A stretch of DNA of 64,000 bases from Bispira polyomma (Eukaryota), in the NCBI GenBank assembly GCA_965649765.1, contig OZ287754.1:37510001-37574000 (forward strand), read 5' to 3'. The position numbers were made by a program, and so were the translations under genes. The notes beneath the pieces were generated by a model. That model had not been told where the DNA came from and ran no database searches. It was given only the letters and a program-made list of their open reading frames with translations. Each line of letters begins with the position of its first letter. Position 1 is the first letter of the stretch. Positions 24,934 to 64,000 of the stretch are shown in pieces.

Positions 24934-27900
24934 ATGAATAGCCTGTTCGTACTTGTCTTGGTGGCGGCTACTTGTGGTAAGCATGCTGTATTTGATTTTG
25001 GATTTAACACCGCTTTCAACACATTGTACAGGTCATGTCACGATGGGCAGCTTTTAGAGCAGTGGATATACTAATTGGTCAAGACTCTACACTTTAAACC
25101 AGCCGTCATCGGCAAATAACTGGCAACTTTTCCGGTCTAAATTTGAATCGAATAGGTGGGAAGCGAGTGTGTTGGTACTGCGCTACCGAGGTCTGTGTAA
25201 GCATGTTTGAATAAGGCGCGGGGGTGGGGGGGGGATATGATATATTTGAGCTTTTTGTTGATCCTGAGATATTATATGGTCTATGTATGTGTGTATTCCA
25301 GTGTGAAAGTATGTATGTAGTACTGAAATGCCTCCCCCTTAATGGGCGGAATAACCATGTCAAAATGTTTCAGGTCAGTAGGGCTTTTTCAGGAGCTGTT
25401 GTTAAAGAGCAAAGCTCTTCGTATTCACGAAGGGACCAGGTCTCAGGCTTAAATCTTTAGAGAGTAGTGCTAAAGCATTGCTGATAAGCAATGCCCATTG
25501 GATAGATTTTCCATTAGATAGCTAGTATTATATAAAAACAAACTATCACTACTAAAGTCTTAAATGGAAACCTCCAGCATTAATATGTATTTAACTTTCA
25601 GAATATTGTGTTTTCAAGCTACATGTGTGGTTAAGATTTTGTAGAATAAACCAATTACCTTGTATGAAAGCTACCTATTAATTGTAAAAGTACCACACCT
25701 ATGAACTAAAACGTCTTTTCCCAAAGTAACTAAAAAAAAAAAACTTTTTCAAAACCGGTAAAGTTTTTTACTCAAAGAAGGGGTGCGGTAATGTGTTTAG
25801 ATACCCTGGTTTTGTATATGACTTGTACCGTCCATATCATTAAGATTCTTAGTCACAAGTGGGGAACAACAATTTGTATTTTGTTTTCTTTAACGTCACT
25901 TTCAATTCACATTTTGTCATGTCATGAAGGGCACGTTTGTGGTGTTTGGTTGTTGGTCTATTTTTGGGTTCTGAAAGCCAACCTTTGGCAAGTGTACTGC
26001 TAATTTCCGACATACATGCCCAAGTCAAGGTATTCATACACAATACCGCAGAGAGATATTATTACTAAACCACTGAGGCCCCTTGAAGAAACTAACCTTC
26101 ACAACATATTTTTAAAATATTTGTTGTCACATTTGGGGAGGGATGCAGCCACCTGTAAAACTACTGGTTTTGGGTGTCAGTCATACCCCCCACATCATTA
26201 CGTCAAATGTGAGGGGCAGCAATATGTAAAACTGTTTTAGGCAGTGGTTTGAAGTGACGCTTGAACCCTCAGCGTCATAACAGTTTTAGTCTCAGATTTG
26301 GGGCAGCAATGTGTAAGCATACTCATTGTTTTATGCATTGGTTATGGGCATAGCCCTACGTACACTCAAATAATATGGTGTTTTTTGGCTCAGGTGGAGC
26401 GACAGTAACATGTTAATCTACTCTGTTTTAGGTACTGGTTTGGGATCTCACCAATACGGTCATCATCATCATCATCATCCTACACACAAACATGAGCCAT
26501 GTGACATCTGTGAAGAAGAAGACTTTTTAGGATTTGGTACACCGTCCAGTAAGTGTGGATGTTGTCCCTGGCCGTGCTGCTGCAAGTGCTTTGAGAGTCC
26601 AGGCGAAGAGCCAGGTGAGTTTGAAGGGGAAGGAGTGTCCGCTGGACAGTACAATACGTCAGAATTTGGAGTGTGGCGTTCACTCTACTTTAAACAATAA
26701 AATTAACTGTATCATCCTGTATAAATCAATACTTTAGGCATTCTTGTTATCTACAGAACAGGTTCTTATATGAACTTCTTCATTAGAAGTTTATTTTAAC
26801 CATGTATGAACTTTGTCAGAAGTAGTTTGTCAAAATAAGATGTCGGGGCCGCGGTGGCCTAGTGGTTAGCAAGCATTGCGTTTCACAATCACTGGTCTGT
26901 CACCTCTGAGCGGCATGAGTTCGAATCCTGTCGATGCCTATGTGGAAAAGGTGGTAGTTCCTTACTGTGGGCCGCTGGTTTCAGTGCAGAACCTTGATCA
27001 ACTGTATGCAGTGTTTCCTCCAGGGTTTCCATCGACCCATCCCAATATAACCTAAACAGGTACTAGAGTGGACGTTAAATATCCAAATAAAAAAAAAAAA
27101 AAAAGAAGTTTTGATTCCGCTTATGTATATTTTAGTGGTTTCTTTGTCCCAAACGGAATATGTTGATTAAATTTGGTACATGCTTGAAATGCTGATTTGG
27201 CTTGGTAGAAGACATTCATTTGACGTTTAATTTTTTTCAATTTAAACCACTGTTTATTTTAACCATACCACTCCAAAACAAAACTATCACCAGGAAATAA
27301 TTTTTTTTATTTATTTATTTATTTTTTTTTTTGAGGGGGGGGGGGGGTAGATTACAGTTAGCTGGCGTCACTAAAACACGCCACAGAGAACTTTCAGCAT
27401 TAAATAACAGCCTTATGCTGTATATTAATCTGGTATATTAATATGTTGCAGTATGTAGAAGTGTTCTCGACATTATGTGGGTTCTTGACTCTAGTGGATC
27501 CATAGGAGATATAGACTGGATTGTGGCCAAACAGTTTGTTTCCGATGTAGTTGGTGAACTGGATGACATTGGACTCAACCAACTGGTAAGAATATAATGC
27601 ACTATTTATTGTGTATCTTTCTCCAAGGGAAGGGGCCGTGACGGCCCAGTGGTTAGAAGTGATTGGGAATGCTCAAAGGTCCCTCACCAATGGGGCTTTC
27701 GAATTCCGTTGATTCCTTCATGTGAAAAGGCTGTCACATACTTACAATAGATAAAGGGTTTCTGTCACCATTAAATACAAACTTATGATATAACCTACAC
27801 TGTTGAAAGTGACGTAAAATCTTTAGGGGTCAGTAGATTGGCTGTCATAGGTATATAACTAATTCTATTTTAGTAAGTACCATATTTGACGTCATTATCG

Positions 27901-30900
27901 TATAAAAAGAACAAAGTATTTTGTAAATAAGAGATGGCATATCAATTTACATAAATAAAAATATTTATATAAAAATAACTATAAATTCAATTATATATAG
28001 AAAAAAAGTCAAAGAAGTATAGAACGTGGGCAAATATTAAACTGTACATATATACTCTTTGTCATAATATCTACTTCACCATAGTTTATAGGAGAACCCC
28101 AACATAACTATGTTTTGATACCTTTTATTTAAACATTAAACAAAAGTTATATATATTAAGGCCTCCATAATGTGGGGAAAAATATTAATTTAGTTGTTTT
28201 TTAAGTCACTTTTAACAGCTGAGGTCATATCACGAAAGCCAGATTAAATTATAGATGGAACTAATTCTGAAGCATTTTAATACACTGACCTACAACCATG
28301 TATTTTGCACAAGAAGCGGACACGATTCAAATCCAACTATTGGTGAGAGGCAAATAATTGTTAAGCAGGTGCTTAGGTTACCACTAGGGCACCAAGGTCC
28401 CTAGCCCTTCAATAGATATTTTAACAGCATATAAAAAATAAGAAAAAATTTGTGATTTACCATGTTTGTTACTGTGATACAAATTTTACTTTACTTGCTC
28501 TTGAAATGATTCATTTGGATTAATTTCAGGTTGCCATGACGACCTATTCCACGAATGCTACTTTGGAGTGGTGCTATGATGGGATTGAGACCACATCCAA
28601 ATCAAAGTTAAATGCTGCTGTGGAAGATCTAATACTAAAAGGAGCTTTCACAAACACTGTGGAAGCTTTACAAAAGGCTACCGGATGTCAGCAGTCACCT
28701 TCAAACAGGTAGCAAATAAGCTGATATATTTCTGATTCTATTTCCTAACATATTTATTTAATACAAGTCAAGTGCTGAATTGATTGGAATTTAACCCAAT
28801 GAGAGCTTGCACAAACACTGTGGAAGCTCTACAAAAGGCTACCGGATGTATGCAGTCACCTTCAAACAGGTAGCAAATAAGCTGATATATTTCTGATTCT
28901 ATTTCCCAAAATATTTATTTAATACAAGTCATGTGCTGAATTCATTGGAATTTAACCCAATCAGACAGGTACTGGCTGATTCTAATGTACATATTTCATT
29001 TTATTGGTTTGTAAAATACAAAACAACTAGGTTTTAAGTTTGCCTTAATACAATAAGTGAGTATCTTTGCTGCGGATTGAGGTCCTATTAAACCTTGGTT
29101 TATTTGATTGGTGTATCATGTCTGGACTATCATGGCTGCATATTGGGGGGAGGGGGTAATAATAAGTAATTAATATGAATAACCTATAACCAGTGATCTC
29201 TTATATTTTGAAGGCCTGAGGCCCCAAATGTATGCATTGTCATGACAGATGGGAGGACAACACATAATGTAGCGCAACTTCCAGACGTGGCAGCTAAATT
29301 TAGGCAATATTGTGACAAGTAAGTCAATGGATCTGTGTGTATCCAGACTTTGTTTGATTTAAAGCACCAATTACGGAATCACCCTGTATAACTAGATTAT
29401 AGTAAGTTTCTGTCTGTATGGGTCTGTCATTACACTCAAATCACCTTGTATGACTAAATAATAGTAATTTTCTGCTTGTATGGGTCTGTCTTTACATTTT
29501 GAATTCCTTGTATAAGTGCAATCATATCGTTCATTTGAACAATTAAATACTTACTTTAGCCATGGAATAACAACGAATGTTTTCTGGCAATGATGATTTC
29601 AGAATGGTCGTGATTGGTGTGACAACAACTTTATCAGAGGATGAACTAAAACTAATTGCTGGTCCAGGTGGGAGCATATTTGAGGTGGATGACTACCAAG
29701 CCCTGCAATCCATCTTGAGTAACATCAGAAAGGTAAGATGGTTTGCCTTTAGACATTACTTAGAATCAGGTTGAAGTACTCTTGGACAAAGGACCACTTT
29801 GAATGCCACGAACTTTTCAAGAGAACTTGTGATATAGATCATTGGTGAATTAGTATTCAGATTGGCAAATTTTAATGCCCAATACCCAATGTTAAACATA
29901 ATGCCAAATGTGTTACAATGGAAAAAACTCAAGGAGTAAAAACGTGGTAGAATTCAAATGTTTTAAGTTGTGAGGATAAAACGGAATCTGCTAAGCTAGC
30001 ACCATCAGACAGACCTGAATTCCAGAATGAATTTTAGGTCATCACGGTTACATTGTAGAGACACAATGTGTACTTTTCATTTAGTGAGTGCAACATTTTG
30101 AGATATTTAAAAAAAAGCTTTTTTCACAATAAATAGGAGAAAGCTACTTATTAATGACCGATGCTAAACTGAAAAAAATGCAGGTTTGTAATTATGTATC
30201 TCTTTCTGTCTCTCTATAGGAAATCTGTGTGGGAGGAAAGAAGCCTATGGAAGAGAAGTGTTGTAAGTATGCTACAGTACCTAAGAGGTTACTTTTAAGA
30301 AGAGACTTACTTTATAAGTAGAAATTTGAATTTCATTCTAGCTATTTAAACTAGTGGGTTTGGATAGAAAAACATTGCTTACAATTAAATTTGTATCATA
30401 ACTAAAAATTGGTCAATAGCGAAACATAATTTAAGTGAATTTCTTTAAAATGTAAAATAGTGAAATTTCCTTTAAGCTAAAATGTTTACATATATACAAG
30501 TATTCTGAATATATTTGCATTTGTTACCCCAATTCATGCTTCAGATAATTTCATTTTCTTAGTGAAGACAAACTATCCGAATAAAATAGAATGCAAATTG
30601 AGCAATGCTAATCTTTATTTTCAAAATGTACTGTTCTTTTCAATGTTGACAAATTAGCAATTTGAATAAGAAATATTTTAGAAAAATATTCTGAATAACT
30701 GTTAAATAAAGTTTCACATGTTATGCACAACTTTGGCCAGACAAAAAATGTTGACATCTGGAAAACTACTGACAAGAGGATATATTTCATCAATGCTGTT
30801 CTGAAATGGCCTTAGTTTATATTATCAATAACTGCTCCCAATTGTTTATTCATTGGGGTTTATAGAATTTAATAAAAGAAATGTGTAAACAAAGCTATTT

Positions 30901-33550: not shown

Positions 33551-35589
33551 CCCTACCAAGCAGAAATTGGTGTTGTTTCTTTCTATAGAATCAATACAAA
33601 TTGATTAGTTTATACACTAAATTTATTTCAAACTGACCTTGCTTAATAATGTCTGTCTCTACAATTCAAAACTTCAACTGCTTTTGGACTGGCTATGGTA
33701 ATTACACTTATATTTTACAGTGGGTTTTTTCTGGGCTTGACAGGGTCAGATATCAAACTGTATCCAATATCTTGGCCTATAACAACAAAACAAAATGTTT
33801 TATGACAAACACATAGGTGAAAATAGTACAGATCCAAATTGTCTGTGTCTTGCATTTGCCATAAGTGATGTAATGTTGATCCTATTAAACTGCAGTTCTA
33901 AAAGAGTCTGTGGATGTTATTACTTCGATAACAAACATGTAAAACCTCCTGCTTGTGAAGGGGAGTCTGCTGTTTCTAAAATCATTTACTAGTGTCTTAA
34001 TTTTGTCTGACAGATGACAATACATTAAATTACAAGTATTTATACGCTTTGTTCTCTTCTATATGATGCTCCATATGGTTCTGTGCATGGACCCCAAAAA
34101 CGTAAAGTTTCACATCATATTTATGCCTCCATGCATTTTGGCTCTTATTTAGATAATAATGAGAAATGCACCAAGTTTACACTTATGAAACTCTACAACT
34201 CGGCTATTATTGTTTGGTACTAATCACAAATCTGAGCAACATACAGCACTATTTACCCATTAGGTTGTCAGACAGTCGTCTGTTCAGAATGCTCGAATGT
34301 ATACCATCTGCAAAACTGTTAAAAACTGTTATCCTCAGCGACAAATGTATAAAAAAACTACATTATCCTCTAGTCCAATAATAAATCTTTTTCAAAACCA
34401 ATGTTCTTACATTTAAAGCAGTTAACTTTGGTAGTTTACCAGTGTACCTATGCCATTTAGTGCAATTTTGTTGACTCACTTGTGGACAAGAGTTTTTTTT
34501 TATTAAAATTACATTGGCGCACATTGTCACTAACATCCCTCAGTTTAGCCGGGTCAATTGCGTCCAACTAATTCATAAAGGTTTACATATTATTTCCAAC
34601 ATGACGGCTGTGCCTGATAATCGCTTGATAATATAAATCTGACATCCCTCAGTTTGGACTGATTGATTGCTTCCAACAAATTCACGAATGACTTACATAT
34701 TATTTATGTAATGGTGGCGCCCTTATCAGGGTTAGAACAACATCAGGTTACGCCAGATAAAAATACCTGCCTTAATATATGATTATGCCTTCCAATAACT
34801 ATCTATCTAGTGTCTCCACTGAAGCATCCACTTCAGAATGGAACAACACTTTCTCCATCCATCTGTACAATGTTTTGGGAGTGTGTATTTGCGAGTATTA
34901 GATGCTACAGAAGCTAATACATTACATCACATATCATCATCTACCATCTACTATAAATTACATTTAAACAATTATGTAATGAGGGGTAAGGTTGATCCGA
35001 AAAAAATCATTTACCCCACCCGTGTACAGAATCTAATAGGGCATATTTATTTTGATGTTTCTGATTATTTACTATGTTAATTCAGATTTTTTAGTCAATA
35101 TACATCATCTTAGTTGTAATTGAAGATATAGAGTCAGGTCCAGTAATCATATAAACTATATTCAGAGAACCTAATTTAATACTTACAAAACAAATTACAT
35201 TTAAGACGCCAAACCTCTGGTCAAACTATATTCTAACTAGTTCAGTGACTGTAAAGCAGCATCATTTGGCAGACTCTATCACTTTGTATATGTATTTATA
35301 ACATCAATATGATGCATTAAAATCTATTGAAACACATGAACTTTTTAAAAGAAACAGACATAATAGAAAACTGGATGCACTCATTGAGTAAAGAAGTAAT
35401 GTATCTTTACACCGGGTTGTTCCTACCACAGAGAACCTGGCATGCTATATTTTTAAACAATATATATCTAAAATTGAGAATGATGACAATTCGGGAACAA
35501 TGATAATACTCCATTTATAGCTGTGTTTAGTGTCTCACTTACATTTGTGACTAAATGCCTGGACATTCGTATCACTCCTATTAGAAATA

Positions 35590-37045: not shown

Positions 37046-37169
37046 ACCATCGATACATGGCATAGTTTTGCTGACTATAGCAGTCAAAAGTTCCAGAAAT
37101 TCCAGAATGTCAGCAGCATTCATATATCTGGCCATCACATATTTGTATAACCACCAATAGACCAACTAA

Positions 37170-40677: not shown

Positions 40678-40685
40678 TATATAAA
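40678..40685 (+). promoter_or_regulatory. TATA box of VWA paralog 2
   Basis: TATATAAA about 80 nt before the ATG, followed about 25 nt later by Inr-like ACAGTT; conserved in paralog 3. Confidence 0.65.
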
Positions 40686-40761: not shown

Positions 40762-43700
40762 ATGAAGATTCTGTGTTTGCTGATTTTAGCAGCCAGCTGT
40801 GGTAAGATATTTAAGTTCTTTCTGTGTAAGTCTGCATACATTATTTTTATTATCCACTCGGCCATGAAATATGATGTTTTGATGTGCAATACAGAAAGGG
40901 TGATAAAATGTGTTTTATTATTTGCTGTGACATAATTATGACATTTTCGTGGTTGATACGGGCCTGGTGATAACATGAACTGTATCACTTGGCGGCACCT
41001 GTAAAAATGCATTTGACAACTGTAGGTAGTCACAGTAATTTCAAAGGACTTGTAACAACATATTGGTATATTAAACTTGATTTTTACTTTTTTATGAATA
41101 CAAATTTGAAGCTAATTCTTTATGGTTATTACTCTGTTTTTTTCTGTTTTCTGTTCTTTTTGAATCTATATGATCATTATAATTACATTTTATAACTGGA
41201 TAATAAAAGTAAAACAACCGTTGTGGTGTGCATATTGAAAAAAATGTATAACTCCGGGAGATAAGACAAGCAATACTCGCTCTACCAGGCTGTGAAAGTA
41301 GTGTTTTATCGTCTCTCATCATATGTATTTTTAATATACACCACATTGGCCCGTTAATATGATGATAATAAAAAATGTAATATTTACCAGTTTTTAGAGT
41401 TAAATTTATTCACTATTTCAACACAAACCTAACCACAAATAAACATTACATCAACTAGAAACCTTAAGCAATATACTTTGATACTAAATTCCGGAAATTT
41501 TAATACTTTCTTAATATGTGTTTAAAGTTTATTCTTTAAGGTACCAACTTCAGATTTGCGTTGTGATGGACTGGAAGGTTTTAAAACGTCAACAAAAACT
41601 TATATATGTACAATATATACAGCATATTTTCAATATTTTCGTATTAAAGTTAGTGATAAAGTGGATAATAAAAGTCAAACAACCCTTGTGCTGTGCATTA
41701 CTGGGCGAGTAATGTGCATTTGTTTTTTTGAGTCATATACTGTTTTAATATACTACCCATCGCCAATTCTGAACGGAAGGTTGACAATTCTGAACAATTC
41801 AAATAGTTATTCAAAAACTGCACCTTATAAATTTCACATATGTGACCATTGTCAGTGCAAAAAATGGTATATCACGGTTCAAATGAATATGTAATGGTAA
41901 CAATCGTTCAGAAGAATTCCCATCGGCCATGACAAGGGTAGGTTTACTATTGTATTTAAACCTATAGTCAGTGGTTGGTATTTAAAGCACTAAGTAAAAT
42001 GCTCTTGTAATAAATCATTGTTCCCCAAGTGTATTACATTGTTTTTGTATGGTACAGAACCAAGTAATGACCTTAATATTAAGTGGTTATTAGACCTACT
42101 ATTTGTGTATTTGCACCTCCAAGACCGAGATCAAACTCTGGTCCTATGTGTTCTTGAATCGGCATTTAACTCATCATCTAATCAGTTTAACACTATTTTA
42201 TTTTTTGTGTATGTTGTAAACATTATCTGATCAGTTTAGCACTCTTCTGTGTTTCTTGGAGGGTTTGTAAACATTATCTGATCAATTTATCACTGTTTTT
42301 CCTTTCTATCCTGTTTTATAAACATTATCTGATCAGTTTAGTACTGTTTTGTATTTCTATGCTGTTTTTAAACATTATCACACTGTTTTGTTCTTTTTTT
42401 GGGTGTTTTGTTAACAATGTCCAACCAGTTAGGCGATGTTTGCTTTTTTATGTAATTTGGAGTTGTTTTAATAGCCCAGACAAACCCTTCCCCATCTGTT
42501 AGAGTTGTTGTTTGCCAACCATTTCTGCCTGTGTTTCAGCCATCAGTCTGGGCTACCATTCTCAACAAAGGACCAGTTGTGGTGCCTGTGAAAACCATCA
42601 TGCCCGAAAACATGATATGTCAGTCAATAAGTGTGGATGTTGCCCGAAGCCTTGCTGCTGCAAGTGTGTGCAAATACCAACCGATCCTGGAGGTAATGCC
42701 TTTAAATAGTTGACTTCTTAAAAACTAAATATAGAATATTGGCTGATACAATTTACAATATTTCCAGTGTTAGAAGTCATCCTAACTTTGTACAAGCATT
42801 TAACAGTGAATGCCTCAGACGAGTTCTAATTCCTTTATATTCAATCTACCTGTAATAACATAAGTTATTTTATTAGAATCCGTCTTGTGACTGGATTGTC
42901 TACTAATATCCTGTACATCGTGAGCATACAGGTGCATCATAGGCATATAATTTGTAAATTTAGTCAGATTTTACTTCGCTTTTAACAGCTTAGGTCATAT
43001 TGTAACAGCGGTGAACAGCCAGATTTAATAGTGGAAGAAACCAGTGCTGAAGTACTGTAAAACACCGACCTATGCCAAGTACCTGACAAACTTTCCCACA
43101 TGAAGCAACAAATGAGATCCAGACTTGCATTGTTGAAATACCATTGAAAGTGAAGCAAGTGGTTCTAACCACTAGGCCACCACGACCACCTATAGGCCTA
43201 CAAGCGTACCATGCAGTGAAAGCACCAGAATTAGTTCTAACTGTTAAATATTGCACAAGCATGGCAAGTCAGTCATGAAGGTTAAATTGAAAATTGTTTC
43301 AGAAATACCAATCATAGCTTAGAATGCTTAAGCATCACAACCAATAGCTCACCTTAATAGTAATACGGTTTCCCGCCTTTTCTTCTATATTAGCATTAAT
43401 TAGTTGCAAGTCAATGAAGCAACACACGAAAATTTAACCAACTTAAGTGATTGAGAAACACAGGTACAGTGATAGTACTGGAATAAGTTCTATCTGTAAA
43501 ATAAGAGACACACCATACATACTCGGTTTGACGCAGATTTGTATTAGTTTACTGTATATTTTTCTCAGAGGGTATGAGGATTTAGGAGGTAAAGTGTTCT
43601 TCAAGGAATAACCCCTTATTGGAGGAATATAAATACATATCCATCCCAAGGTTTAAGTGGGTTTCTGACAGAATAAAAATATAAGTGCATTTAAAACTGA

Positions 43701-46700
43701 ATCATGTTTCTCGAGGAACTATATATATTGGCACCTATATACTATATGGAGGAAAATGGCAGTGGCTGTTCCTACATTTAATCCCATCTAATAAAAAAAT
43801 GCACACAAATATTAATGATAAGTGTTATCCAGTAGATTCCATTTATTTCCTATAGTCACTGTTTTCCGTTAATGCATTGCTAAATCTTCTTAGATTAATT
43901 AATCTTCTGAAACATTAATATCTTTATATATTACAAATCAGGCTTTTAATTATTTCTGAAGTGAAATAAATTGTGAAAACAAAAACAAGAAGGTGGTCAC
44001 TATAATAGTATATCTGTATTTACAAATTACTGCATAATATTTTGCTCACCTTAACATGGGCATAAAACAGTTGAAAGTATTTAAATTGAATTGTGTCATT
44101 CAATAAAAATAGCTTATTTCTGTAATATTACAGGCTGTTAAATAAATTTGGCAGTAAACTTGCTGAAAGTCAAGGTGGTTTGCCATTCAGAAATCTTTAT
44201 CAACTTCTCTATTCTGATTTCCTTTACCAGTAAACCTCCCATTGCAATATAATAAGCAGTAGTAAATATAATGGTATATTTTCCCCTTTCCTCATAAAAA
44301 TTGGTCAAGTTCTGCTTTTAAATCCTTACTAAAATGACATTGAGTAAATTTTTCTTGTTAAAAACTATTCAAGAAGGACTTTGATAAAGACGCCTTGCAA
44401 TTGACATAGTAACTAAACCATTAAACTTCAATTTCGATTTTCCCGAATAAATAAGATTTTCTAATATCTGTGTGGGGGTCACTTACTATCATCACTATAG
44501 AACAACAAAACCAACAAGAGGTAGTGTTATGATAAATGTAAATTTGCATTTATATAGAGCTTGCCTTTAAAGCGCTGTTTTCAGTTTACACTCCCAGCCT
44601 GGGTTCTGCCAACGGTCAACCCCAATTGTTTACTCTCAGTTCCTCAAGGGAGCAAACTAGCCATGCCACATATGGTGCACAAAGACTAACATTTATACAC
44701 CTGGGTGGAGAGGGACAACTTTGTGTAAAGTACTTTGTCTAAGGGTACAACCTCCAAGCCTGCAGCGTGGATCTAACCTGGACCCTCAGATCCCTCAGAT
44801 CCAAATCTGACACTCTTACCATATGAGTACACAATACATCATCTAGGGATAATGCAGTGGTTTTTGAATAGGGTTCAATGGTAAAACCAATTTCCTGAGA
44901 ATAATGATTACCAATTTAAAATTTGGAAAAAAAATTTATAAACAGAAGCAATAAAGAGCATTGTTTTAATATGGGGTGTATAGTGACTTAGTTCAAATAA
45001 CGACAAAATTAACCATATAGTTGTGTACATTATGTATCATGTTGTTTTTGTCACTGTACACAGAATGCCACATGGTACTAGACTTGATGTGGATTGTTGA
45101 CTCGAGTAACTCCATAGGATCTGATTGGATTTTCGTACAAAATTTTGTCAAGGCAGTTACAGGCTCACTCAGTGATCTTGGTTCAGATCAACTGGTAGGA
45201 ATATTGTTAACATAAAAGATAAAAGTAGTTGATTCCAACCTTTGCAATTTTTGTAAGCAACATCCAGATTCTATTTACCACCTTTTGACTCAGTGCACTT
45301 ACGTGGACAAATTGTGAAAAAATATATTAGATTGGATGTTGAATAAGTTGACTCTTAAAATAGAGCTTTGCGATTCTAGAAAAAATTGTATATGGTTTTC
45401 TGAATTTACTTTTACCTATATATCTATCTGCTTATCATTTTACACGTGGGTAATACTTTTACAATTTTAAATATATTTGATAGTTTGACCCTTTTTTTCA
45501 TCAGTAAATATTATTTTGTTTAATTCTATTATTTGATTTTTGCATCAGGCTGCTCTGGTATGCTATGGTAATAGAAGCCCCATGCCTCTGAAACATTGGT
45601 GCTTTGGAGGTACAGAGACTAATAATATTGGCAACTTTAACTCTGCTGTCATGGGTTTAGACCTAAAAAAAGGAAACACAAATACAGCGGATGGCATAGA
45701 CCAAGCCCTGTTATGCTTGGGATCTGGAGAAGATAGGTAATGTTTAATAGATCTAATAAAGGGTTAATTTACTGTCATAGACACTCGTCCCCCTTTGATT
45801 TAGAATGCACATGGTTATTGTTGGACAAAAGAATCAAATCTGGCCTCTTCTCTTTGCAAATTTGGTACAGATATGTCCAGTAAATTTCAACAACAAATTA
45901 GAAATAATTGAATATTTGTGAGTCAATATCCAACATAACCTATGATTGATCATGATATCTGGCAATGACTCAGCGGGCATTGATATGATACACATCGATG
46001 AGCAATAGCTGTCCTTAATTTGATAATAAATGATTAAACTATAATAAACTTCTATTTGTCAACCTTCTGTATCCTCAACAAAGATTCTTTTAGATATTTC
46101 CCACAGTAAGGTTCTATACATTTGTTTTTCATGCTTCACCCATGAATCACCAATACAAAAGTCTGTCCAGCAAAATTATTAGCTTAATTTATATTTGATG
46201 TGCCTCTACATATTTAGATAACACTATCGAACAGTGTGTAATGTTGTGAAAATATTTTAATTATTATGCTAAAGTATATTTTCCAGGGTTGAAGCACCCA
46301 ATGTCTGCATTTTAATGACTGATGGCAAGTCAAATGATCGTACAGAAGACCTTCCAGCTTTAGCTGTAGACCTAGACATTAAGTGCAATGGCAAGTAAGT
46401 GACTTTCACAATATATAATGTATGTAAGTTCACTTTAATGGTGTTTGACAATTGCAGAGTTGGCAAGATGTAAAATCTTGAAAAAAATCTGCGGTGTAGT
46501 AGTATGCTGCCATGGTGAGTTTGGATCTCAGCCGCTGATTTGTATGTGGAAAGTTGGCAGCATACTTGCTGAAGGACAGGATTTTGCAGAACAAAAAACC
46601 TTTACTGACTAACATGTTCTTACTTCCTCCACCAGTAGACTGACCAACGTGATATGACACAAAATGTGTTAAATGCAATGTTAAGCTGAATCTAAACTAA

Positions 46701-48429
46701 ACACAAGGTAAAAACGGAAAACTACAGCTAGTGGATGGACACTGTGTATTTTTTTTTGGGGGGGGGGCTGCTTACTGTCATCGGTCTATCAGCTGTCTCC
46801 TTTAGATGACACTGTTACCCCATTATCCTTTTTAACAAAAATCTTTCTGATCCATTGACTATAATTTATCGATGATTGTGTTTTTCCATAACAGTCTCAT
46901 CTTATATATAAGAGACTTTGACAATATGCCTACTGTGTATACAGATGGCCTTTTAAATTGTCCAACTGCTTTCCTAATAGGTGTTGTAATATACCATAGG
47001 TAAATTGTAAAAAGTAGGGTCACAATAACCACAAAAATGGTGTCACAAAATTACTACCTTTCCATATGAGTCACACCAACTCAGTATTGTGTTTTTATTC
47101 CAGTGTATTAGTTATTGGTGTGACTGATGACGTGGATGCTACTGAACTTCTGGTAATTGCTAATAATAAGATTGAGAGGGTGATTACAGTTCCTAGTTTC
47201 CCTGAACTGATAGGAATGCTGGACGATGTTATAAAGGTAAGAGTGATTACTTAGTATGATGATTGAATGCATATTTCTATTGTTTATTGTATACACTATG
47301 CTGTTAAATATATATAGTGTATATGATCACAAATACACATGTAAATCGAACATCTCCTATTATATCATCATGTATATACATTTTCACTGAATGCCCATAT
47401 AGACATTTAATATATGTTCCATTTAGTTATGATGTAGTCAAGATATTTATATATTTTAATGTGTTTTGGTTTCAGGAAATTTGCCCTGAACCTCAATTCG
47501 AGGAAGAATGCTGTGAGTAGAATTAATATAAATATGTTAAATACTGAATGCAGATTTTACTATTTGAAAAGTATCAAACAAATGGAAGGACAATCCTCTA
47601 AATTTCAGCTTTTTGTACACAGAGGGTTTGTATATACATATTCTGAATATAGCGAGATTTTCTATTGTTTTTCTTTTGTCTAGAATTTGTCTGCAGACAA
47701 TGTACATAACCTGTGTGTACTATATATTTTATTCAGACTCTTACATTTTACAAGGTACATGCTGTAATGGTCAAGTTAGTTTAACTGCTTTATTTTATTA
47801 GAAGACATGACACCCACATAAAATTGCTATACACCTGGTCTTACTATTACATAACATGCCTTCATATGAGAACTGCCCGCCATTCTCTATAGTTTACAAC
47901 GTACAATTGGTTGGCTTTGCTGAGGATTATGTGTGACTCATACCACTTACCACTACCATGTAATAAAAATATTAATTAAAGCATTTATAGAGCACCTAAC
48001 TGTTGAAAACATCCTGTAAGGTGCTGTTATCCAAATAGGGAAGGTGCAGGCGCAAGCACAATGTTGTTACCAAAAGCATCAGAAAAGAAAGTAAGGATTT
48101 AGTGGTCCAGATAGTTTAACTACTTTGTTTACATTGTTTACAATGTGTTACATACCATGTCTTTAAAGATCAACAAGATCACTAAAATACTGGGCTTATC
48201 ATACACTGAGCCTATAGTATTACAATGAGTACGGTATTCAATCAGACTTTAATCTCTTTTCTTCAATCTGTTTTCAGTTTGTTGCTGTCCCCCTCCTCCA
48301 ATGATTGAGACACACAGCCATCCCTACTCGCCGTATGGTTACCAACACCAACCCTATTCCTACCCTCATTGTCCTTATCCATATCCTCTTCCACCTTACC
48401 CATATCCTTCTCCACCCCAACCATACTAA
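40762..48429 (+). CDS. Secreted Cys-rich single-VWA-domain protein, paralog 2 (313 aa, 8 coding exons)
   Basis: join(40762..40801,42540..42692,45064..45194,45549..45736,46287..46394,47104..47236,47476..47512,48278..48429) = 942 nt, GT-AG introns, same phases as paralog 1. Signal peptide MKILCLLILAASCAISLG; CGAC-x14-CGCCPKPCCCKC; VWA LDLMWIVDSSNSIG...TNT...VCILMTDG...VLVIGV; CFCCC followed by a Pro/Tyr/His-rich tail. Confidence 0.92.
42170..42430 (+). repeat. ~51-bp minisatellite in intron 1 of paralog 2
   Basis: CATTATC recurs at 42221, 42272, 42323 and 42373. Confidence 0.75.
42958..43186 (-). mobile_element. SINE family B copy in intron 2 of paralog 2
   Basis: GCTTTTAACAGCTTAGGTCATAT...CTAACCACTAGGCCACC (reverse-complement A box). 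Confidence 0.65.
44525..44822 (-). mobile_element. tRNA-derived SINE, family A
   Basis: Reverse complement of the 5432-5710 head and core. Confidence 0.7.
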
Positions 48430-49734
48430 CAGAGCTCTTCATACGTGCAAAGTTAGTTTAACATTGGAAATGTTGATATTTTAATTTTTAATTGTATTCT
48501 TAGCAGTATTACAATAATATCTTGTGATAAATCAATTTTAACAAATAATAAGTCACATTAAGAGTTATGTGTGAAACATTTGCCATGTTGTTTTTGTAAT
48601 TGTAGAATTTGATATGGCACATTAAGATGGAACTGAAAATTATCAATAGATTATTGGATGTATTTGGGAGAGTTGGAGAATTCTAGTTACTGAAATGTCA
48701 AATTTACCGAATAAAACTACCTAAGCTTTGCATTTTGTTTTATTTATAAATCACAAATGTGAATTTTTATATTAGGATGTAATTGTACTTAGTTTCCCAA
48801 TTTCTTTAAAAATACTGGTATTCACCATAATATGTCTTTGTTTGAATGTAGCATCCCCAATTTCAACATTCCACCTTAGTGTTCTTCAGTGGATCTTGTT
48901 CATTTATTACATCTTGATTTAAATTAATAGTATGTCTATATTGAATTCATCTATCATGAATGAGTTGAGGTTTAAAACTACAACGAAATAATAATACTAT
49001 ATAAATGCATTATGATGTGGATACATGACTTCTAAGTATAAAGACCTTCTGATGATAGATATTCTACACATCACAGGCAACCCACAGCATTTCATTTGAC
49101 AAGGTGCAGTACTTAAGGAAATAAAAAAACTGTTTTGTGCTGCCCATCAAAGTGCTGTTCTTTGTCTACATTACAGAGTGGTTAAGCTACTGTTGTGTTA
49201 AAGATATTTATTATTTACCTATGCCAGGAGGTCTACGATTTTACCCGTGTTGGTTGGTTTGTTTGTTGGCGTGTTTGTTAGCAGGATTATACCAAAACTA
49301 CTACACCGATTATTACCAAATAAAATACATAATTAATACTAATAAAATAATAAACCAGACAAATAGAAAATCACAACCAAAGCTAAACTGGTAAAAATTA
49401 TTTTAACAATGTTATTATATTTTGCAATAAACTTATCTTCTGCAATTCTAAATCTAGTGACGACATTTGCACCTCACAATCATACACAAAATCAGGCCTC
49501 AGATGTGCTGTAGATTTTACCCTGGTTGACCTACGAGGGACAGCAACTGGTGAGATAGAGACTAAACTCTGATCTGAGACTTACTACGACTATTGTCACC
49601 CAATGAAGACAACTGATTTTGATCATTCTTACTTGATAATGCCGATTAGGGGTGGAGAGATATAGATAGGCCAATAAAAAACAGCATTATATTTTAATTA
49701 GTACACATACCACCAGCAAAGCTATGCAGGACAA

Positions 49735-54186: not shown

Positions 54187-54192
54187 TTTCAG

Positions 54193-55170: not shown

Positions 55171-55177
55171 TTTGGCT

Positions 55178-55592
55178 TGGGTGTTTTTAAAATTACTCTG
55201 CATTTTAAACCATTATGATGTTTTACCCCTACCTGTAGATATACTGAACTAACATGTACAGATTTAAATAAATTCCTCAAACCATGGTTTTACTGTCTTC
55301 AACATATAACCACACAAAATTGCTATCCGACCTTCAATACCGACCTTCCATTTTCACTCAGTAGAACTGTGCATAGCATGACCCAACAGGGGTCTGCTAC
55401 TTCAGTTCTACCACAGAAAATTTATATGACTACCTTAACCCCTAGGGATTGATTCTATCACTACAAATTATTCACCCAACCGTGAATAACATACTCTAGC
55501 CAATCAGAAGCTCTCCCTCTTAAAGTGGCCACGTTTTCTGTAGAGATCTTCCATTTTGGAACCAGATTCAGCAGTATTAACACAGACATTTT
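55178..55592 (+). repeat. Internal B1-A2 junction of the split direct repeats
   Basis: B1 55178-55369 directly abuts A2 55370-55592 (AGAACTG|TGCATAG); B contains AATAAA at 55267. Confidence 0.95.
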
Positions 55593-56205
55593 CCCCCCAC
55601 CTCCCCTTACCACAGCACAAGATATTATGAAGGTTCTTTTCAAAAATTTTCTCCCATTTCACTTATGGCCAATTTGTGGTCCTAAACACTTATCTATACT
55701 GCTAGCTTATGGCATGTAAGCACATACCGAGTTTAGATGGTTACTTGATTACGGACCCACTGCGCCCTGCTGAGATTATTAGAAAAACTCTTGATTCGTT
55801 TGGATTATGAGAGTTTTTGAACTCGGAACTGTGTGGTGTTAGATCCTTCTTCATAACCTACCCTCTGGTGTGGGCTACCAGGGGGGCAATGCTCTGTGAG
55901 GAAGGATGTCTCACTGCTAGGCGAGTCGGTGTCACAAGTTCCGGGTTCCTAAAAATTCATATAGGCCTTTGGCGCAGGTTCATGTACTTATATTTATGAA
56001 ATTTTAATATTTTGTGAATGGTAAAAGATTAATGTGTAATTGTTATGTATTGGCTTAGGGGGCCGTTAATAATTACTAGCAGGTGTCATTTAGGCGAATG
56101 CTAGCTCTCAGATGTTGAATTTCAACTTGCTCTGCTGTTTCGAGGCTTATATCCTCTTATATTGTTGCTGTACTGGCGGTTTTGTTTGTACTGTTGTACT
56201 ACGTA

Positions 56206-56397
56206 TGGGTGTTTTTAAAATTACTCTGCATTTTAAACCATTATGATATTTTACCCCTACCTGTAGATATACTGAACTAACATGTACAGATTTAAATAAA
56301 TTCCTCAAACCATGGTTTTACTGTCTTCAACATATAACCACACAAAACTGCTATCCGACCTTCAATACTGACCTTCCATTTTCACTCAGTAGAACTG
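56206..56397 (+). repeat. Split direct repeat B2 (192 bp)
   Basis: Matches 55178-55369 with 3 substitutions by eye. Confidence 0.95.
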
Positions 56398-57790: not shown

Positions 57791-58149
57791 ATCGTTAGTA
57801 AACCTGCATGGATCCCAGGGTATCTGGTCCAGGTCAAGTTTTGCAGTGATTAGCAGGCCAGCACTATTGCCAAATTTGTGGGATAAAATCCCAAATAAAT
57901 TTGTAACTGTTGTCCTGGCGAGGTTCTGTCTTGAAAATGACTACATACACCATTCCCTCAGAATAAAGGCATCATTTACAACATGTAAAGTATGGCTGAT
58001 CATCCCCGACTAGAGACTCATCAGGAAAAGCCGATGGTAGCATCATCAATGACTTCTTTCAGTTAGCAAGCATTACAAAACTGGGCATTGGAGCAGCTGC
58101 CATTGCTAGCCACGTCCACCAAGACTTATAGTCCGTATCCACCAGTGCC

Positions 58150-59020
58150 AAGAGTATAATCTAATCAAAATCAATTTCGTAATGGCACTTAATCTCCTTA
58201 ATACTTGTCTAGGGGCCAAAAAAACAGAATCGTTATTCATTATTTGTGTTGTGGTGGACGAAAAAGGGGTCGTTACCAGGGAGGGAGTCGGTAATGGTAA
58301 AACCATGACAGGAGGGATAAGCTTTTTGATAGACAGGTCTTGCCTAAAAAAGTTGAAAGAGAAGGTGAGCATCTAATATCTTGCGGTAGGTGATTCCATA
58401 GCTTAGGTGCAGCGTATGAGAAACTACGATTGAAATGGACTTTTGAACTGTGTATGCTGCGATCAAAGGTAGGAACATTGAGAAATAATTTGTTAAGATT
58501 TCCGCGATGGGTTTTGGCTTGCTGAGAGTAATTGGTGGGATTTGGGCTGAGATATTTTGGGAGACCTGTATTGAGAGACGTATAGACCAATGGTGCAGTT
58601 TTGAACATACATCGAAATTTAACAGGAAGCCAGTGTAAATATTTTAGAACAGGAGATATGTGGGAAAACTGAGGTATTAGTGATAATACGAGCTAGAGTA
58701 TTCTGTATTGCCTGAAGGCTTAGCAATGAATTAAAATAGTCAATAGAACTGCTTACAAGTGCATTAGCCAACAACATAGCTGTATCCAGCAACAAATAGT
58801 GTTTCACTGACCAAACAGAATTTACAGACAGAAGTGACGTGTTTGCTGAAAAATGAAAAAATCAGTGTTAAACATTACTCCAAGATTAAGTTAAACCTTT
58901 TACGGTGATATCATATTCCCAAGGATGTTTATTGGAGAGTAACCTGCATACTAGTGCCAAAAAAAATATATATTCTGTTTTGTCAGGATTAAACTTGAGC
59001 TTATTTGATAACATCCATTC
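58150..59020 (-). mobile_element. L2/CR1-clade LINE 3' fragment
   Basis: ORF2 C-terminal motifs LANALVSSSIDYFNSLL, HWLP, FSYAAPKLWNHLPQDIR; (TTAGA)-like tail near 58156-58175. Confidence 0.85.
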
Positions 59021-59850
59021 TTGCCATCAATTACCCCAAGTAAGCAATGGCCTTCCACTCATCTGGTGTATTTGGGCAGTACTTTTTAGCGCAATACTTC
59101 ATATATCGCCATACTTACATCCTTAACAAGCTTTGAGATAGGGTTGGCAACCTTGCGGAAGCCGAGCACTGGGGATTTATATGAAATTATCAGATGCCAC
59201 GTGTCTAAGGATGATAGCCAGTTTAATGGACCTGCGGAATAAAGTGTGTGACTTCTCGATCATGTGCTCCAAAGATCCACCAGCTGAAACATAGCTGCGT
59301 GGACCCTAACAAATTGCTTGAAAGCTACCATGTCCTTCAAGACCAGCTCAGTCATCAAATTCTCTTAAGGCTGTAGTAACGTAAACACACAAATGCGCAG
59401 CCCGTATATATACTGCACTTACGAAAATATTTTGACCATAAGTACCCACCATGGCAGCCTTAAAATAGGTCTTTAGTGACAGTTTTAAGCAGTTATACAT
59501 GCAAATACCATTTAAAAGTTTACTAACAATTCATGTGTTGTGACGTCACACAATTTAAAATTTATGGTGGAACCTCATATTTGTAAACAATTCTCGCAGA
59601 GAGCCCCTTCTATTGTGACACAATACGAGTATTGATCCAGCATATATAAAGATATTATATAGGCTACACATAAATATGTTATCTATAAATCGAGTTTAAG
59701 GCCACAAAGAAAAGGTTGTGCAGTTTCTGAGAAGCTCAAGCACACATAACGTGGTTATCCGAGATCGTTTTTTGTGTTTACGTCACTAAACCCTTAATGA
59801 TCATTTGAAGGCCTTCTCAAAAGCCAGCTTCTAACACAAACATCCACCTT
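59020..59850 (-). pseudogene. Harbinger transposase relic (paralogous copy, interrupted by the TTAA element)
   Basis: ENLMTELVLKDMVAFKQFVRV...IEKSHTLFRR...KLAIILRHVASDN...CPNTPDEWKAI; homologous to 36665-37045. Confidence 0.75.
59369..59793. mobile_element. Non-autonomous TTAA-targeting DNA transposon (Kolobok-like termini)
   Basis: TTAA TSD at 59365-59368 and 59794-59797; 25-bp imperfect TIRs (21/25) starting GG and ending CC; empty site CTC-TTAA-TGATC at 36981-36984. Confidence 0.85.
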
Positions 59851-61107
59851 TGTTGATGGTCCAATCTTAAAAATATCCCCTTTTGTTTTTCAGAGAAAAG
59901 TGAATAGAACTATGGGGTTACCTGTTAGGCCCCCCTTACTTTGCCTAAACTTAAATAATACTTAACAAAAAAAAAAACAAAAAAAAACAACACAGAAATA
60001 CAAACAAAATACCTTGTATGGATTCAGTTTGAGAGTTTAAGGTCAGACTCCTTGCCGACATACTGGCAGACATATGTAAGTGACTAGTTTTCACCCAATC
60101 AATGAGACTATTGTATGCTGTCTACACTTGCGACATTTAGACATGATTAAATTATTTGTCTGGTAACATTCTATATATTCAGTCTTTCTGATGTCAATTA
60201 TTGACCCTGGATTCATAGAATTCTATTTATACTATCTTGTCTATTTCATGACAATGAGCCCATTGAAAGTTTTTAAGAAAGCAAAACAAATGGAGGTATG
60301 CGATAATTTTGCAAATTACAATAACAGATGAAAAAAATGAATATGGATGGTGACATTATGATTATTGAGATGTACATACAAGGCATTGTCTTATTACAAT
60401 AGTTATTATATATTATTGTGACAATCATTGCCCTATTCATTGCCACTATTCACATAAACGGCTATGTCTTACTGAAATATTGAACTTGAAATTGTTTAGA
60501 AGTGCTTACAATTATTTCAAATGGTGTTTTTTTTGTTGCAAAAATGCCTAATTTATAAGAATAGAAGGGCATGGTTTTCTTAGATTCTGTCTAATATTTA
60601 TTCACTCAGTCCCAAAACGAGTACTATTGTGTGTCTATATTTCTCTACAGATATTAAAACAACAGCAACAAACACTTCAAACAGGGAGAAAAAGTGTAAA
60701 TATATTTCGGTTTTATTGATATTAATTCCAACCCTACTTCTGAAAAAAATATTAGAATTATCTGTTAATCGTAGACTCCCTTATCAATTCTTTGATTAAT
60801 TTGTTGTCTTTAGTCAATCTGTCTTTCGTTTTTAGAGGAAATCCATTGTTATTATTCTGTGAAATGCAGACTGGTTTCTTATTAACCAGTATTTGATATT
60901 GGAGGCTTAAATAAAAAGATAATGGTTGTGTCAAAAGTAATAGAAACTGCTAAAATCTATAACAGCGTCATTATAGAGGAAATGAAAACACCCCAAAAAT
61001 ATTATTCACACCAATTAAACAATTGAATTTGGCCATTGTAATTATTGCAGCAATAGGGAAATAAATACACACGTAAGGGAAACATTGGTTTATGTCCAAG
61101 AATGGTT

Positions 61108-61115
61108 ATATAAAC
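61108..61115 (+). promoter_or_regulatory. TATA box of VWA paralog 3
   Basis: TATATAAA in the same context as 40678-40685. Confidence 0.6.
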
Positions 61116-61190
61116 ACACTTCTCAGGAGGACAGTTACTGTACATCTGACTGTCAATGACATACTTACGTACGTACAACTAAGCCAGACC

Positions 61191-61230
61191 ATGAAGATTC
61201 TGTGTTTGCTGATTTTAGCAGCCAGCTGTG
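61191..61230 (+). CDS. Exon 1 (signal peptide) of a third VWA paralog; gene continues beyond the window
   Basis: ATGAAGATTCTG...AGCTGTG|GTAAG identical to paralog 2 exon 1 (MKILCLLILAASC). Promoter and intron 1 are homologous to 39250-42240, and the window ends in sequence matching the region about 300 bp before paralog 2 exon 2. Whether the gene is intact cannot be seen. Confidence 0.8.
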
Positions 61231-62704
61231 GTAAGATATTTAAGTTATTTCTGTGTAAGTCTGTATACATTATTTTTGGTAAGAAACCTCCAGCGTGATC
61301 ATTAGCTTGGCACAGGGATGTTGTATGACTGACGGGTCCAAGATTAACCATTTAGGTGTGTAGATTTATGGATAATATTCATGCAATATATATCTTGTTT
61401 TACCGTTATTAATGTTATATTTGCCTTATATTTGTGGTTTATATATATTTGTCTGAAATAAGGTACACGGATAGAAGTTTATTTCATAATAGATAAGTAA
61501 AACCTCTTTGTGACCTGCTTTTTTGAAGGCTGTTCTTGCTATTATCCATTAGGCTGTGAAATACAATGTTTTGATGAGCAATACGGAGCGGGAGATATAA
61601 AGTGTTTTACTATCCACTGTGACGTGAGAATGACGTTTTCGTGGCTAATACAGGCCGGATGGTAAAATGAACCGTGTCACCCGGCGCCCGTAAATGTGTA
61701 TATAAAAACTGCAGTAGTTACAGAAATTCGCACTGTTTTTAATGTCATTTTTACTGAATATTTCAGATAGTAAATTGATAAATAGTGTGATTAACATATA
61801 AACAACATAATGGTACATTTAAGTGCTATGTACATACGAGTTGAAAGGCAATTCTTTAGGAGACCAACTCTGTACTTTTTGGCTTTCAGATTTGCATTGT
61901 GTCGTCATAATGAAAGGTTTTGAAACTTAAACAAGAATATATACAGTTTTGGGTTGTTTAATATTGTCTTAGTAAAAAAATAATCTATCAATTGCTTAAA
62001 ACTTTCGATATATTTTACATAAGCAATGTTATTGTCAAAAAAACCTAATTTTTAGAGTAGTAAAAGTTTTAATTTGAAGCTAATTCTATAAGGTAACAAG
62101 TCAGTACTTTTTGTCTATTTTGCCCTGAATTTTCAATATTTTAGACCCTTTTCAGACTGTTTTTGTTATATTTTGAACTATATTAATTAATATAACGATA
62201 TTATATCAGTTAATAATAAAAGTAAAATGACACTTGTATATTAAAAAATTATATGACTTAAGTAGATAAAATGCACAATACTCGCCCTGTGGGGCTTGTA
62301 TCGTACTTTTTATATTCTTTCGTCATATAATTTTTTCATATACACCACTCGGGTAATTTTTCTAATGAACTGTATCACCCGTCCCAATGAATGTGTATAT
62401 AAAAACTGCAGTAGTTAAAGGAATTTCAATGTCATTTTTATTGAATATTTCAGATAGTAAATTGATAAATAGTGTTTAACATAAAATATAAACCTTAGAC
62501 AACATAATTATATAATAAACTGGATTTTTAATACTTTCTAAATACAAATTTGAAGTTAATTCTTACAGGTAATAACTCTGTACTTCTTGGCTTTTAGATT
62601 TGCATTGTGACGTTATAATAGAACGTAAACAAACAACATATACGGTTTGGGGTTGTTTTAATATGGTCAAAACAAACAAAGTTATCTATAAATTCTTTAA
62701 AACT

Positions 62705-62707
<3 letters not shown>

Positions 62708-62786
<79 letters not shown>
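62708..62786. repeat. (TA)n microsatellite
   Basis: Direct reading. Confidence 0.98.
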
Positions 62787-62789
<3 letters not shown>

Positions 62790-64000
62790 GGCTCTTGTTA
62801 TATTTATAAATATAAAATATAAGCAATATGCTATGTTATTTTGCACAAAACGTGATTTTTAAATTGATGGAAGTTTGTATTTGAAGCTAATTCTTTGAGG
62901 TCACATCTTAGTACTTTTTAGTTGTATTATGTAATTTGTCGTGAATTTTTAATGTTTTCGGACTCTTTCTGACTGTTTTGTGTTATATTTAACCTATATA
63001 AGCATAATAATTATATTTTATCAGTGGATAATAAATGTAAAACAACCCTTGTGTGCATTAAGAAGATAAAACGCACAATACTCGCGCTACCGTGCTCGTA
63101 TTGTACTAATCATCTTCTTTCGTCATATATTTTTTTATTATACAACACTCGGGTAGTTTTACTATTGTATCACCCAGTGCCCGAAACTATATTATATAAA
63201 ATGTAATATTTACTGATATTACCAAGTTTTTAAAAAAAATTTTTTTTACTATATTAATATAAACACTAGTAAAAATTACATCAAATAGAAACCTTAAGCA
63301 ATACTAGGCTACAATACTAAAATTGTGTTTTAAGGTACCTTGTTTTAGATGTTTTATTTTATATATTGTGTAAATTTAGCAGAATATCTGTTTTAAAAAA
63401 ATGAGTAAATTCAATATTAAAACCTTGAAAAGTGACGCAAATCCTGTCATTTTAAATCTATTTTCATAGGCAACGTGTGTTAACTACCTCAGAGTGGAGG
63501 ATGATACATAGTGTAGTGTGAAATTTCTTGAAATCCCTGGAAATTTTAGTTATTTCGTGAATTGCCTAATTGAATCAGAGATTTCACGAAATTACTACAA
63601 AAAATCACGAAATTCCTGATTGCATTATTTGACTGTAACATATATACTGTATACACAACATTTGCATTAGTTTTTGTAATAAAGCTTGAAATAAAGTCAA
63701 CAATAAAATTAAAACAACCCTTGTGGTGTGCATATTGAAAAAGTACATGACTCAAGGAGATAAAATGCACCTTACTCGCCCTACCAGGCTGGTATTGTAC
63801 TGTTTATCTTCTTTTGTCATATAATTTTGTACTAGATACACCACTTACTTTTGTCAGACCCAGGTCCTATGTGTTCTTAATTGAGCATTTAACTCAGAAA
63901 CATTTTTTTGTTTTTCTTGTGCATTTTGTGCACATTATCTAATCAGTTTAGCACTGTCTTTTTTATTGATGACAAAGTACATATACAAAATAAAATACAT

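What the first reader, a model, noticed from the sequence alone, without database searches (positions are those of the whole stretch)
24934..64000. Tandem cluster of secreted VWA proteins capped by poly-Cys modules and His/Tyr tails: candidate self-crosslinking biomaterial or adhesive family
Seen: at least three head-to-tail paralogs, invisible as whole ORFs in the track. Both complete genes have signal peptide - CxxC-x14-CGCCPxPCCCKC - VWA - CFCCC - low-complexity tail ending in Tyr, with identical intron phases, although the VWA sequences have diverged substantially. Established: VWA domains occur in invertebrate extracellular materials (mussel byssal PTMP1, molluscan shell Pif/BMSP, matrilins), and His-metal and Tyr/DOPA cross-links harden such materials. 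Inference: these are small polymerising matrix units for a cuticle, tube, shell, glue or egg coat. I do not recognise this domain architecture from any named family.
Basis: partly seen in the sequence, partly recalled or inferred. Interest (0 to 1): 0.85.

Follow-up and report, generated by a model that had tools for sequence, protein, structure and literature searches.

The report
Cysteine-stalked secreted VWA protein family
These genes encode small secreted proteins with one metal-dependent adhesion (VWA) domain flanked by two mirror-image cysteine runs, an arrangement with no named match that probably links the proteins into disulfide-bonded clusters that cross-link an invertebrate extracellular matrix, although tissue and function are untested.

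Summary
The window has two intact 8-exon genes (299 and 313 aa, all GT-AG, identical intron phases). Each encodes a signal peptide, CxxC, CGCCPxPCCCKC, one VWA domain with a full MIDAS, CFCCC and a Tyr tail. A third copy is seen only as promoter, exon 1 and intron 1. An intron-less 281-aa homologue matches gene 1 in order along its length, supporting the splice joins. Six further paralogues or orthologues turned up in three other unannotated animal datasets; no named protein carries the Cys modules. The 7+4 Cys modules, MIDAS and C-terminal Tyr are conserved; His tracts and CxxC are not. The modules are mirror images at matched distances from the VWA, and two low-confidence AlphaFold models place strands there in that register. 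Best reading: the ends zip into a disulfide stalk, and the odd eleventh Cys joins chains into multivalent matrix cross-linkers that work like matrilins or PTMP1 without being members. A glue or bulk-biomaterial role is untested and the His-metal part is weakened. New variant of VWA matrix proteins; host probably a mollusc (not established).

The parts
24836..24841 (+). gene 1 TATA-like box
   Evidence: sequence; inferred
24934..24976 (+). gene 1 exon 1, signal-peptide h-region
   Evidence: hydropathy
26432..26614 (+). gene 1 exon 2: His6 tract, CxxC, GFGTP motif, N-terminal Cys module (about 26554-26589), linker
   Evidence: 89% identical to the orthologue in L008 over 44 aa
27452..27585 (+). 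gene 1 exon 3: VWA-opening Cys and MIDAS DxSxS (27487-27501)
   Evidence: Pfam VWA E=2.4e-5
28530..28708 (+). gene 1 exon 4: VWA, MIDAS Thr loop
29214..29318 (+). gene 1 exon 5: VWA, MIDAS Asp (TDG)
29603..29732 (+). gene 1 exon 6: VWA end
30220..30262 (+). gene 1 exon 7: VWA-closing Cys, linker, first Cys of CFCCC
   Evidence: matching exon in L012
31813..31895 (+). gene 1 exon 8 coding part: CCC, FFGGGGAYYY motif, His/Tyr end, stop
   Evidence: 94% identical to the P0001 tail over 17 aa
32345..32350 (+). candidate poly(A) signal of gene 1
   Evidence: inferred
40678..40685 (+). gene 2 TATA-like box
   Evidence: conserved in the gene 3 copy
40762..40801 (+). gene 2 exon 1, signal-peptide h-region
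42540..42692 (+). gene 2 exon 2: CxxC and N-terminal Cys module (about 42632-42667)
45064..45194 (+). gene 2 exon 3: VWA start, DxSxS (45099-45113)
45549..45736 (+). gene 2 exon 4: VWA
   Evidence: 40% identical to gene 1 exon 4 over 40 aa
46287..46394 (+). gene 2 exon 5: VWA, TDG
47104..47236 (+). gene 2 exon 6: VWA end
47476..47512 (+). gene 2 exon 7: VWA-closing Cys, linker, first Cys of CFCCC
48278..48429 (+). gene 2 exon 8 coding part: CCC and 46-aa Pro/Tyr/His tail, stop
48710..48715 (+). candidate poly(A) signal of gene 2
   Evidence: inferred
59021..63967 (+). segmental copy of the gene 2 upstream region and intron 1 (65-88% nucleotide identity, collinear with 36675-42355)
61107..61114 (+). 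gene 3 TATA-like box
61191..61230 (+). gene 3 exon 1, identical to gene 2 exon 1 with an intact GT donor; the rest of the gene lies beyond the window

Best explanation
A lineage-restricted family of secreted, roughly 30 kDa, acidic single-VWA matrix proteins that act as disulfide-linked multivalent cross-linkers. Shown: the genes, the VWA domain, an intact MIDAS and invariant 7+4 Cys modules. Inferred step 1: the two ends of a VWA domain lie side by side and are closed by a flanking Cys pair (established for this fold). Here the linkers run away from it antiparallel, so CCC[KR]C pairs with its mirror image C[FI]CCC as a cross-strand disulfide stalk. Inferred step 2: the stalk leaves the CxCC block unmatched and the total odd (11), so at least one Cys per chain bonds to another chain, giving covalent homo- or hetero-oligomers of the tandem paralogues. 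Inferred step 3: each head binds an acidic residue of a matrix fibre such as collagen through the MIDAS metal, so the oligomer bridges fibres as matrilin oligomers or two-headed PTMP1 do. Inferred step 4 (weakest): terminal Tyr residues can be oxidatively coupled and fix the complex in the matrix.
For: Open GT-AG gene models. An intron-less homologue P0001 matches gene 1 exons 2-6 and 8 in order. Orthologue and paralogues keep the intron positions. Gene 1 versus orthologue: dN 0.23, dS 1.71. DxSxS, Thr loop and TDG are present in all 7 complete members. The VWA fold is confident (pLDDT 90-98) and closest to PTMP1, E=1e-17. N-/C-linker lengths match: 10/11, 10/9, 10/11, 11/9, 14/11, 11/9, 30/29 (P0005 counted from C75). 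Both models give equal-length strands at the two modules in the mirror register: E55-62 with E257-264 in P0001, and E43-47 with E288-292 in P0005, 30 residues from the domain. The 7+4 Cys count is invariant. PTMP1 binds collagen (PMC4754843).
Against: pLDDT of the module strands is only about 50-56, and the output does not name the strand partners. The linker correlation rests mostly on one long member. Oligomers could not be modelled. An odd Cys may stay free, be capped or bind metal. There are no data on expression, tissue or ligand. PTMP1 topping the fold search reflects a generic VWA fold (24-29% identity). The host taxon was not identified.
Confidence: 0.45

Rival explanations
1. One reading: bulk self-polymerising units of a hardened secreted material (glue, tube, periostracum, byssus, cuticle, egg coat), cured by disulfide exchange, His-metal and Tyr/DOPA bonds.
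For: Tandem expansion; Tyr-rich ends in all members and a Pro/Tyr tail in gene 2; VWA proteins recur in byssus, shell and ascidian adhesives; the layout of Cys modules at both ends recalls minicollagens (memory).
Against: His tracts are absent in the orthologue and in most members. Low-complexity sequence is a small part of the chain. The proteins are acidic. The Cys symmetry favours intrachain use. There is no tissue or proteomic evidence, and the motifs were not found in papers.
Confidence: 0.22
2. A soluble monomer or dimer whose Cys stalk is just a stabilising cap; the VWA head recognises foreign or gamete surfaces (immune opsonin or fertilisation protein).
For: Gene duplication with one fast-evolving copy (gene 2 branch 1.21 versus 0.30 for gene 1); dispersed paralogues in another genome; complete MIDAS.
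Against: The extremely conserved terminal motifs (FGTPASK, FFGGGGAYYY) and the odd Cys suggest assembly rather than a mere cap; no positive selection was seen between gene 1 and its orthologue.
Confidence: 0.2
3. The Cys modules are metallothionein-like metal-thiolate clusters (Zn/Cu/Cd), making an extracellular metal carrier or buffer with a VWA targeting head.
For: Density of CxC, CC and CCC motifs; nearby His and acidic residues in some members.
Against: The secretory pathway oxidises Cys (established knowledge); no Pfam or PDB match of the module to metallothioneins; the mirror register fits disulfides.
Confidence: 0.08

Closest known systems
PTMP1 (Mytilus proximal thread matrix protein 1; PDB 4cn8/4cn9)
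   Same: Secreted invertebrate VWA protein with a metal-bound MIDAS in its structure; top fold match (E=1e-17, 26-29% identity) and second sequence match in PDB; collagen-binding cross-linker is the working model.
   Different: PTMP1 has two VWA domains in one chain and about 1.3% Cys (PMC4754843); this family has one VWA and 11 clustered Cys in its termini.
Matrilins and mollusc 'cartilage matrix protein-like' proteins
   Same: MIDAS-type VWA; best named sequence relatives (26-34% identity; Mya, Saccostrea, Ruditapes); matrilins gain multivalency through interchain disulfides (own knowledge).
   Different: No EGF repeats, no second VWA, no coiled coil; the named hits lack the Cys modules and fall outside the family clade.
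Pif / BMSP shell matrix proteins
   Same: Secreted molluscan VWA proteins.
   Different: They pair VWA with chitin-binding domains (PMC13564323); Pfam finds only VWA here.
Single-VWA adhesive proteins (ascidian ASP-1; Pinctada P-UF1)
   Same: ASP-1 is a secreted adhesive protein with one VWA whose adhesion improves on Tyr oxidation (PMC12817120).
Cnidarian minicollagens / NOWA
   Same: Analogy only (memory): short Cys modules at both ends of a small secreted protein, next to Pro runs, used for disulfide assembly.
   Different: No Gly-X-Y, and the Cys spacing is not the CxxxCxxxCxxxCxxxCC pattern.

Membership tests
VWA domain superfamily (MIDAS type) | Rossmann-like VWA fold | tested here: met
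   Pfam PF00092 by exon and on P0001/P0005 E=6e-33/1e-35; model and fold search
VWA domain superfamily (MIDAS type) | DxSxS, Thr and Asp MIDAS residues | tested here: met
   Present in all 7 complete members; metal binding itself not tested
Matrilin | VWA plus EGF repeats (usually two VWA) | tested here: not met
   Only one VWA and no EGF by Pfam
Matrilin | C-terminal coiled-coil oligomerisation domain | tested here: not met
   Tails are 11-46 aa and rich in Pro, Gly and Tyr; no helix after the VWA in either model
Matrilin | Disulfide-linked oligomers binding collagen | not testable with these tools
   Inferred only from the odd Cys count and the MIDAS
PTMP1 | Two tandem VWA domains | tested here: not met
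   One VWA; both PTMP1 domains align to the same single domain
PTMP1 | Location in byssal thread matrix | not testable with these tools
   No expression data
Pif/BMSP | VWA plus chitin-binding domain | tested here: not met
   No chitin-binding Pfam hit
Minicollagen/NOWA | Six-Cys CRD pattern and Gly-X-Y or CRD repeats | tested here: not met
   Read from the sequences; pattern recalled from memory
Metallothionein | Cytosolic Cys-rich metal-thiolate domain | tested here: not met
   No Pfam or PDB match; hydrophobic N-terminal leader present
DOPA/His-cured marine adhesives | Conserved His tracts for metal cross-links | tested here: not met
   Tail His counts 3,4,1,0,1,0,0; His6 absent in the orthologue
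DOPA/His-cured marine adhesives | Tyr converted to DOPA; secretion from an adhesive gland | not testable with these tools
   3-10 Tyr per tail in all members; modification unknown

The most novel reading that the evidence does not exclude
The split, mirror-image CCCKC/CFCCC pair is a new oligomerisation module. It folds as an intrachain stalk in the secretory cell and then uses or reshuffles its spare cysteines to polymerise VWA heads into a metal- and Tyr-cured structural material of an invertebrate lineage, a convergent counterpart of the minicollagen disulfide switch.
Probability: 0.18. Interest if true: 0.8.

Novelty: new variant of a known kind. Interest (0 to 1): 0.47.

Why it matters
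VWA domains turn up in almost every invertebrate glue, byssus and shell proteome, but how single-domain members become multivalent is mostly unknown. This family offers a compact, testable answer: a 12+5-residue split cysteine module that could clamp a domain's two ends and join chains. If confirmed, it is a new disulfide assembly motif, useful for annotating unassigned matrix peptides and for designing wet-setting protein materials. If it proves monomeric, it remains an unannotated lineage-specific VWA family of modest interest.

Tried and rejected
Searches used single exons by reference, an alignment of the two exon-2 peptides, or natural full-length database proteins (P0001, P0005, P0004). 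Joined models were built only inside scripts, for frame checks, Cys counts, dN/dS and a tree. A word-based search with gene 2 exon 4 found nothing; given its length limit, that blank says nothing about full-length relatives. P0003 is a repeat translation and was rejected as a chance Cys match. A metagenome DNA scan returned only the two known transcripts. A literature search for five motif strings gave one irrelevant hit. Attempts to name the host failed: accession search, SINE k-mers in a bivalve repeat library (files truncated), the coral metatranscriptome paper and exact look-up of window ORFs. The PTMP1 structure paper and the slug glue paper were not held. No second paralogue was found within about 17 kb downstream of the gene 1 orthologue, so the tandem array is not shown to be conserved. 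A retained or alternative exon at 28803-28965 was considered and not modelled (it has a donor but no clear acceptor). The VWA tree cannot show co-evolution of the two ends: gene 2 lost both the GFGTP/W and the FFGGGGAYYY motifs, but that is one event. No contig taken for human was fetched; human entries appear only as names in PDB hit lists.

Full report
Observation. A six-frame scan found the CCPxPCC motif twice, at 26560 and 42638, each downstream of CxxC. Exon models give two open reading frames of 299 and 313 aa. Each has eight exons, all introns are GT-AG, and the phases are identical (1,1,0,2,2,0,1). Pfam places VWA on exons 3-6 of gene 1 in profile order and on exons 3 and 5 of gene 2, and finds nothing for exon 2. 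The N-termini have a short hydrophobic core and there is no later membrane-like segment outside the VWA (no dedicated signal-peptide predictor was available). The third copy consists of a duplicated upstream region, TATA box, an exon 1 identical to that of gene 2, and an intron 1 collinear with gene 2 up to the window end. It is a recent duplicate of gene 2 whose integrity cannot be judged.

Relatives. A profile of the two exon-2 peptides against 1.84 billion cluster representatives gave three hits, two of them real. P0001 is a 281-aa uninterrupted reading frame on a 1267-base JGI contig that looks like a transcript. It has the whole architecture and matches gene 1 exons 2-6 and 8 in order, which supports the predicted joins, including the split CFCCC. 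Searches from P0001 added P0005 (same sample) and three genes in ENA assembly ERZ22147071. L008/L012 is a gene 1 orthologue: 69% identical, same introns, dN 0.23 and dS 1.71, and it shares a neighbouring gene exon. L009 is a paralogue with the same VWA introns. L002 has lost them and sits antisense inside CFAP54. A Logan fragment (L006) carries exons 2 and 3. The seven complete VWA domains form one group apart from matrilin-like outgroups (94/94 support, just under the starred threshold), and gene 2 is a fast-evolving sister of gene 1 plus its orthologue (99/96). No named NCBI or UniRef hit has the Cys modules; the best named hits are generic bivalve matrilin-like proteins at 26-34%. These searches are limited by shared words and by length, and a divergent member such as P0005 was missed by the Cys profile, so absence from annotated genomes is likely but not proved. 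The host is an AT-rich animal, probably a mollusc, judging by the nearest named hits and by SINEs that I recognise only from memory. I could not confirm this, nor my recollection that the JGI sample is a Caribbean coral holobiont metatranscriptome.

What is conserved. Invariant in all seven: CxCCxxPCCC[KR]C (7 Cys), C[FI]CCC (4 Cys), a Cys opening and a Cys closing the VWA, the MIDAS residues, and 3-10 Tyr in the tail. Four members share FGTP[AS]SK before the first module and FFGGGGAYYY after the second. Variable: the CxxC (absent or differently spaced in three) and His. The His6 tract and HHH of gene 1 are missing in its orthologue, and P0005 has no His.

Mechanism. The last five residues of the N module (CCCKC) are the mirror image of the C module (CFCCC). 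They lie at matching distances from the VWA-closing cysteine pair: 10/11, 10/9, 10/11, 11/9, 14/11, 11/9 and 30/29 residues. Since the two ends of a VWA domain are adjacent (established knowledge), this is what an antiparallel intrachain stalk would look like. Two AlphaFold2 models, of P0001 and P0005, each show two equal-length extra strands at exactly these places. Their positions put the last Cys of CCCKC opposite the first Cys of CFCCC. Confidence there is low (pLDDT about 50-56) and the pairing is my inference from the secondary structure list. The VWA core of the second model is confident and closest to PTMP1, collagen VI and integrin I domains. The stalk would leave the CxCC block without a partner, and the modules total 11 Cys, so at least one per chain must be free or bonded to another chain. 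The most economical reading is a disulfide-linked oligomer with several MIDAS heads that bridges matrix fibres, working like matrilin or PTMP1 (collagen binding of PTMP1: PMC4754843). Oxidative coupling of terminal Tyr is possible but unshown. I put this at 0.45. The rivals are a bulk glue or hardened material (0.22), a soluble recognition protein with a capped end (0.20) and a metal-thiolate carrier (0.08).

Comparison and novelty. The proteins are members of the MIDAS-type VWA superfamily. They fail the defining tests for matrilins (no EGF, no coiled coil), PTMP1 (one VWA, not two), Pif/BMSP (no chitin-binding domain), minicollagens and metallothioneins. VWA proteins in invertebrate secreted materials are well known, so the kind is not new. 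The split mirror cysteine module has no match in Pfam, NCBIfam, PDB or the searchable literature. Verdict: a real, conserved, apparently undescribed family and a new variant of a known kind, with function inferred only. Interest 0.47.

Noticed in passing
window 49735-56397: Tyrosine-recombinase (DIRS/Ngaro-type) retrotransposon between genes 2 and 3. It has split direct repeats (49735-49957 with 55370-55592; 55178-55369 with 56206-56397; 98-99% identical) and ORFs at 50079-51056, 51334-54186 (RT) and 54484-55170 (integrase family).
   Followed up: partly
window 21397-21588, 6231-6416, 4828-5052 (minus strand): Probable exons of an unnamed neighbouring gene with no convincing Pfam match. The 21.5-kb exon also lies near the gene 1 orthologue in ERZ22147071 (62% identical) but on its downstream side.
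   Followed up: partly
window 28803-28965: 163-base, 94% identical copy of the 3' end of gene 1 exon 4 with its splice donor, inside intron 4.
   Followed up: partly
L002 9441-10618: Family member with the VWA and tail in a single exon (possible retrocopy), lying antisense within a CFAP54 gene.
   Followed up: partly
window 26845-27085, 24989-25190 and L002/L008/L009: tRNA-type SINE family shared by the window and ERZ22147071 (73-87% identity), suggesting related hosts; it resembles molluscan SINEs from memory but was not matched to a library.
   Followed up: partly
gene 2, window 40762-48429: Gene 2 has a long VWA branch (1.21 versus 0.30 for gene 1) and has lost both terminal motifs kept by gene 1 and three other members, gaining a Pro/Tyr tail.
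   Followed up: partly
window about 35400-36400 and 58100-59100: Decayed LINE-like reverse-transcriptase fragments, judged by eye from the sequence.
   Followed up: no
window 61666-63850: Intron 1 of gene 3 contains internal duplications of 350-370 bases and a long TA run, so it is longer than the gene 2 intron.
   Followed up: no
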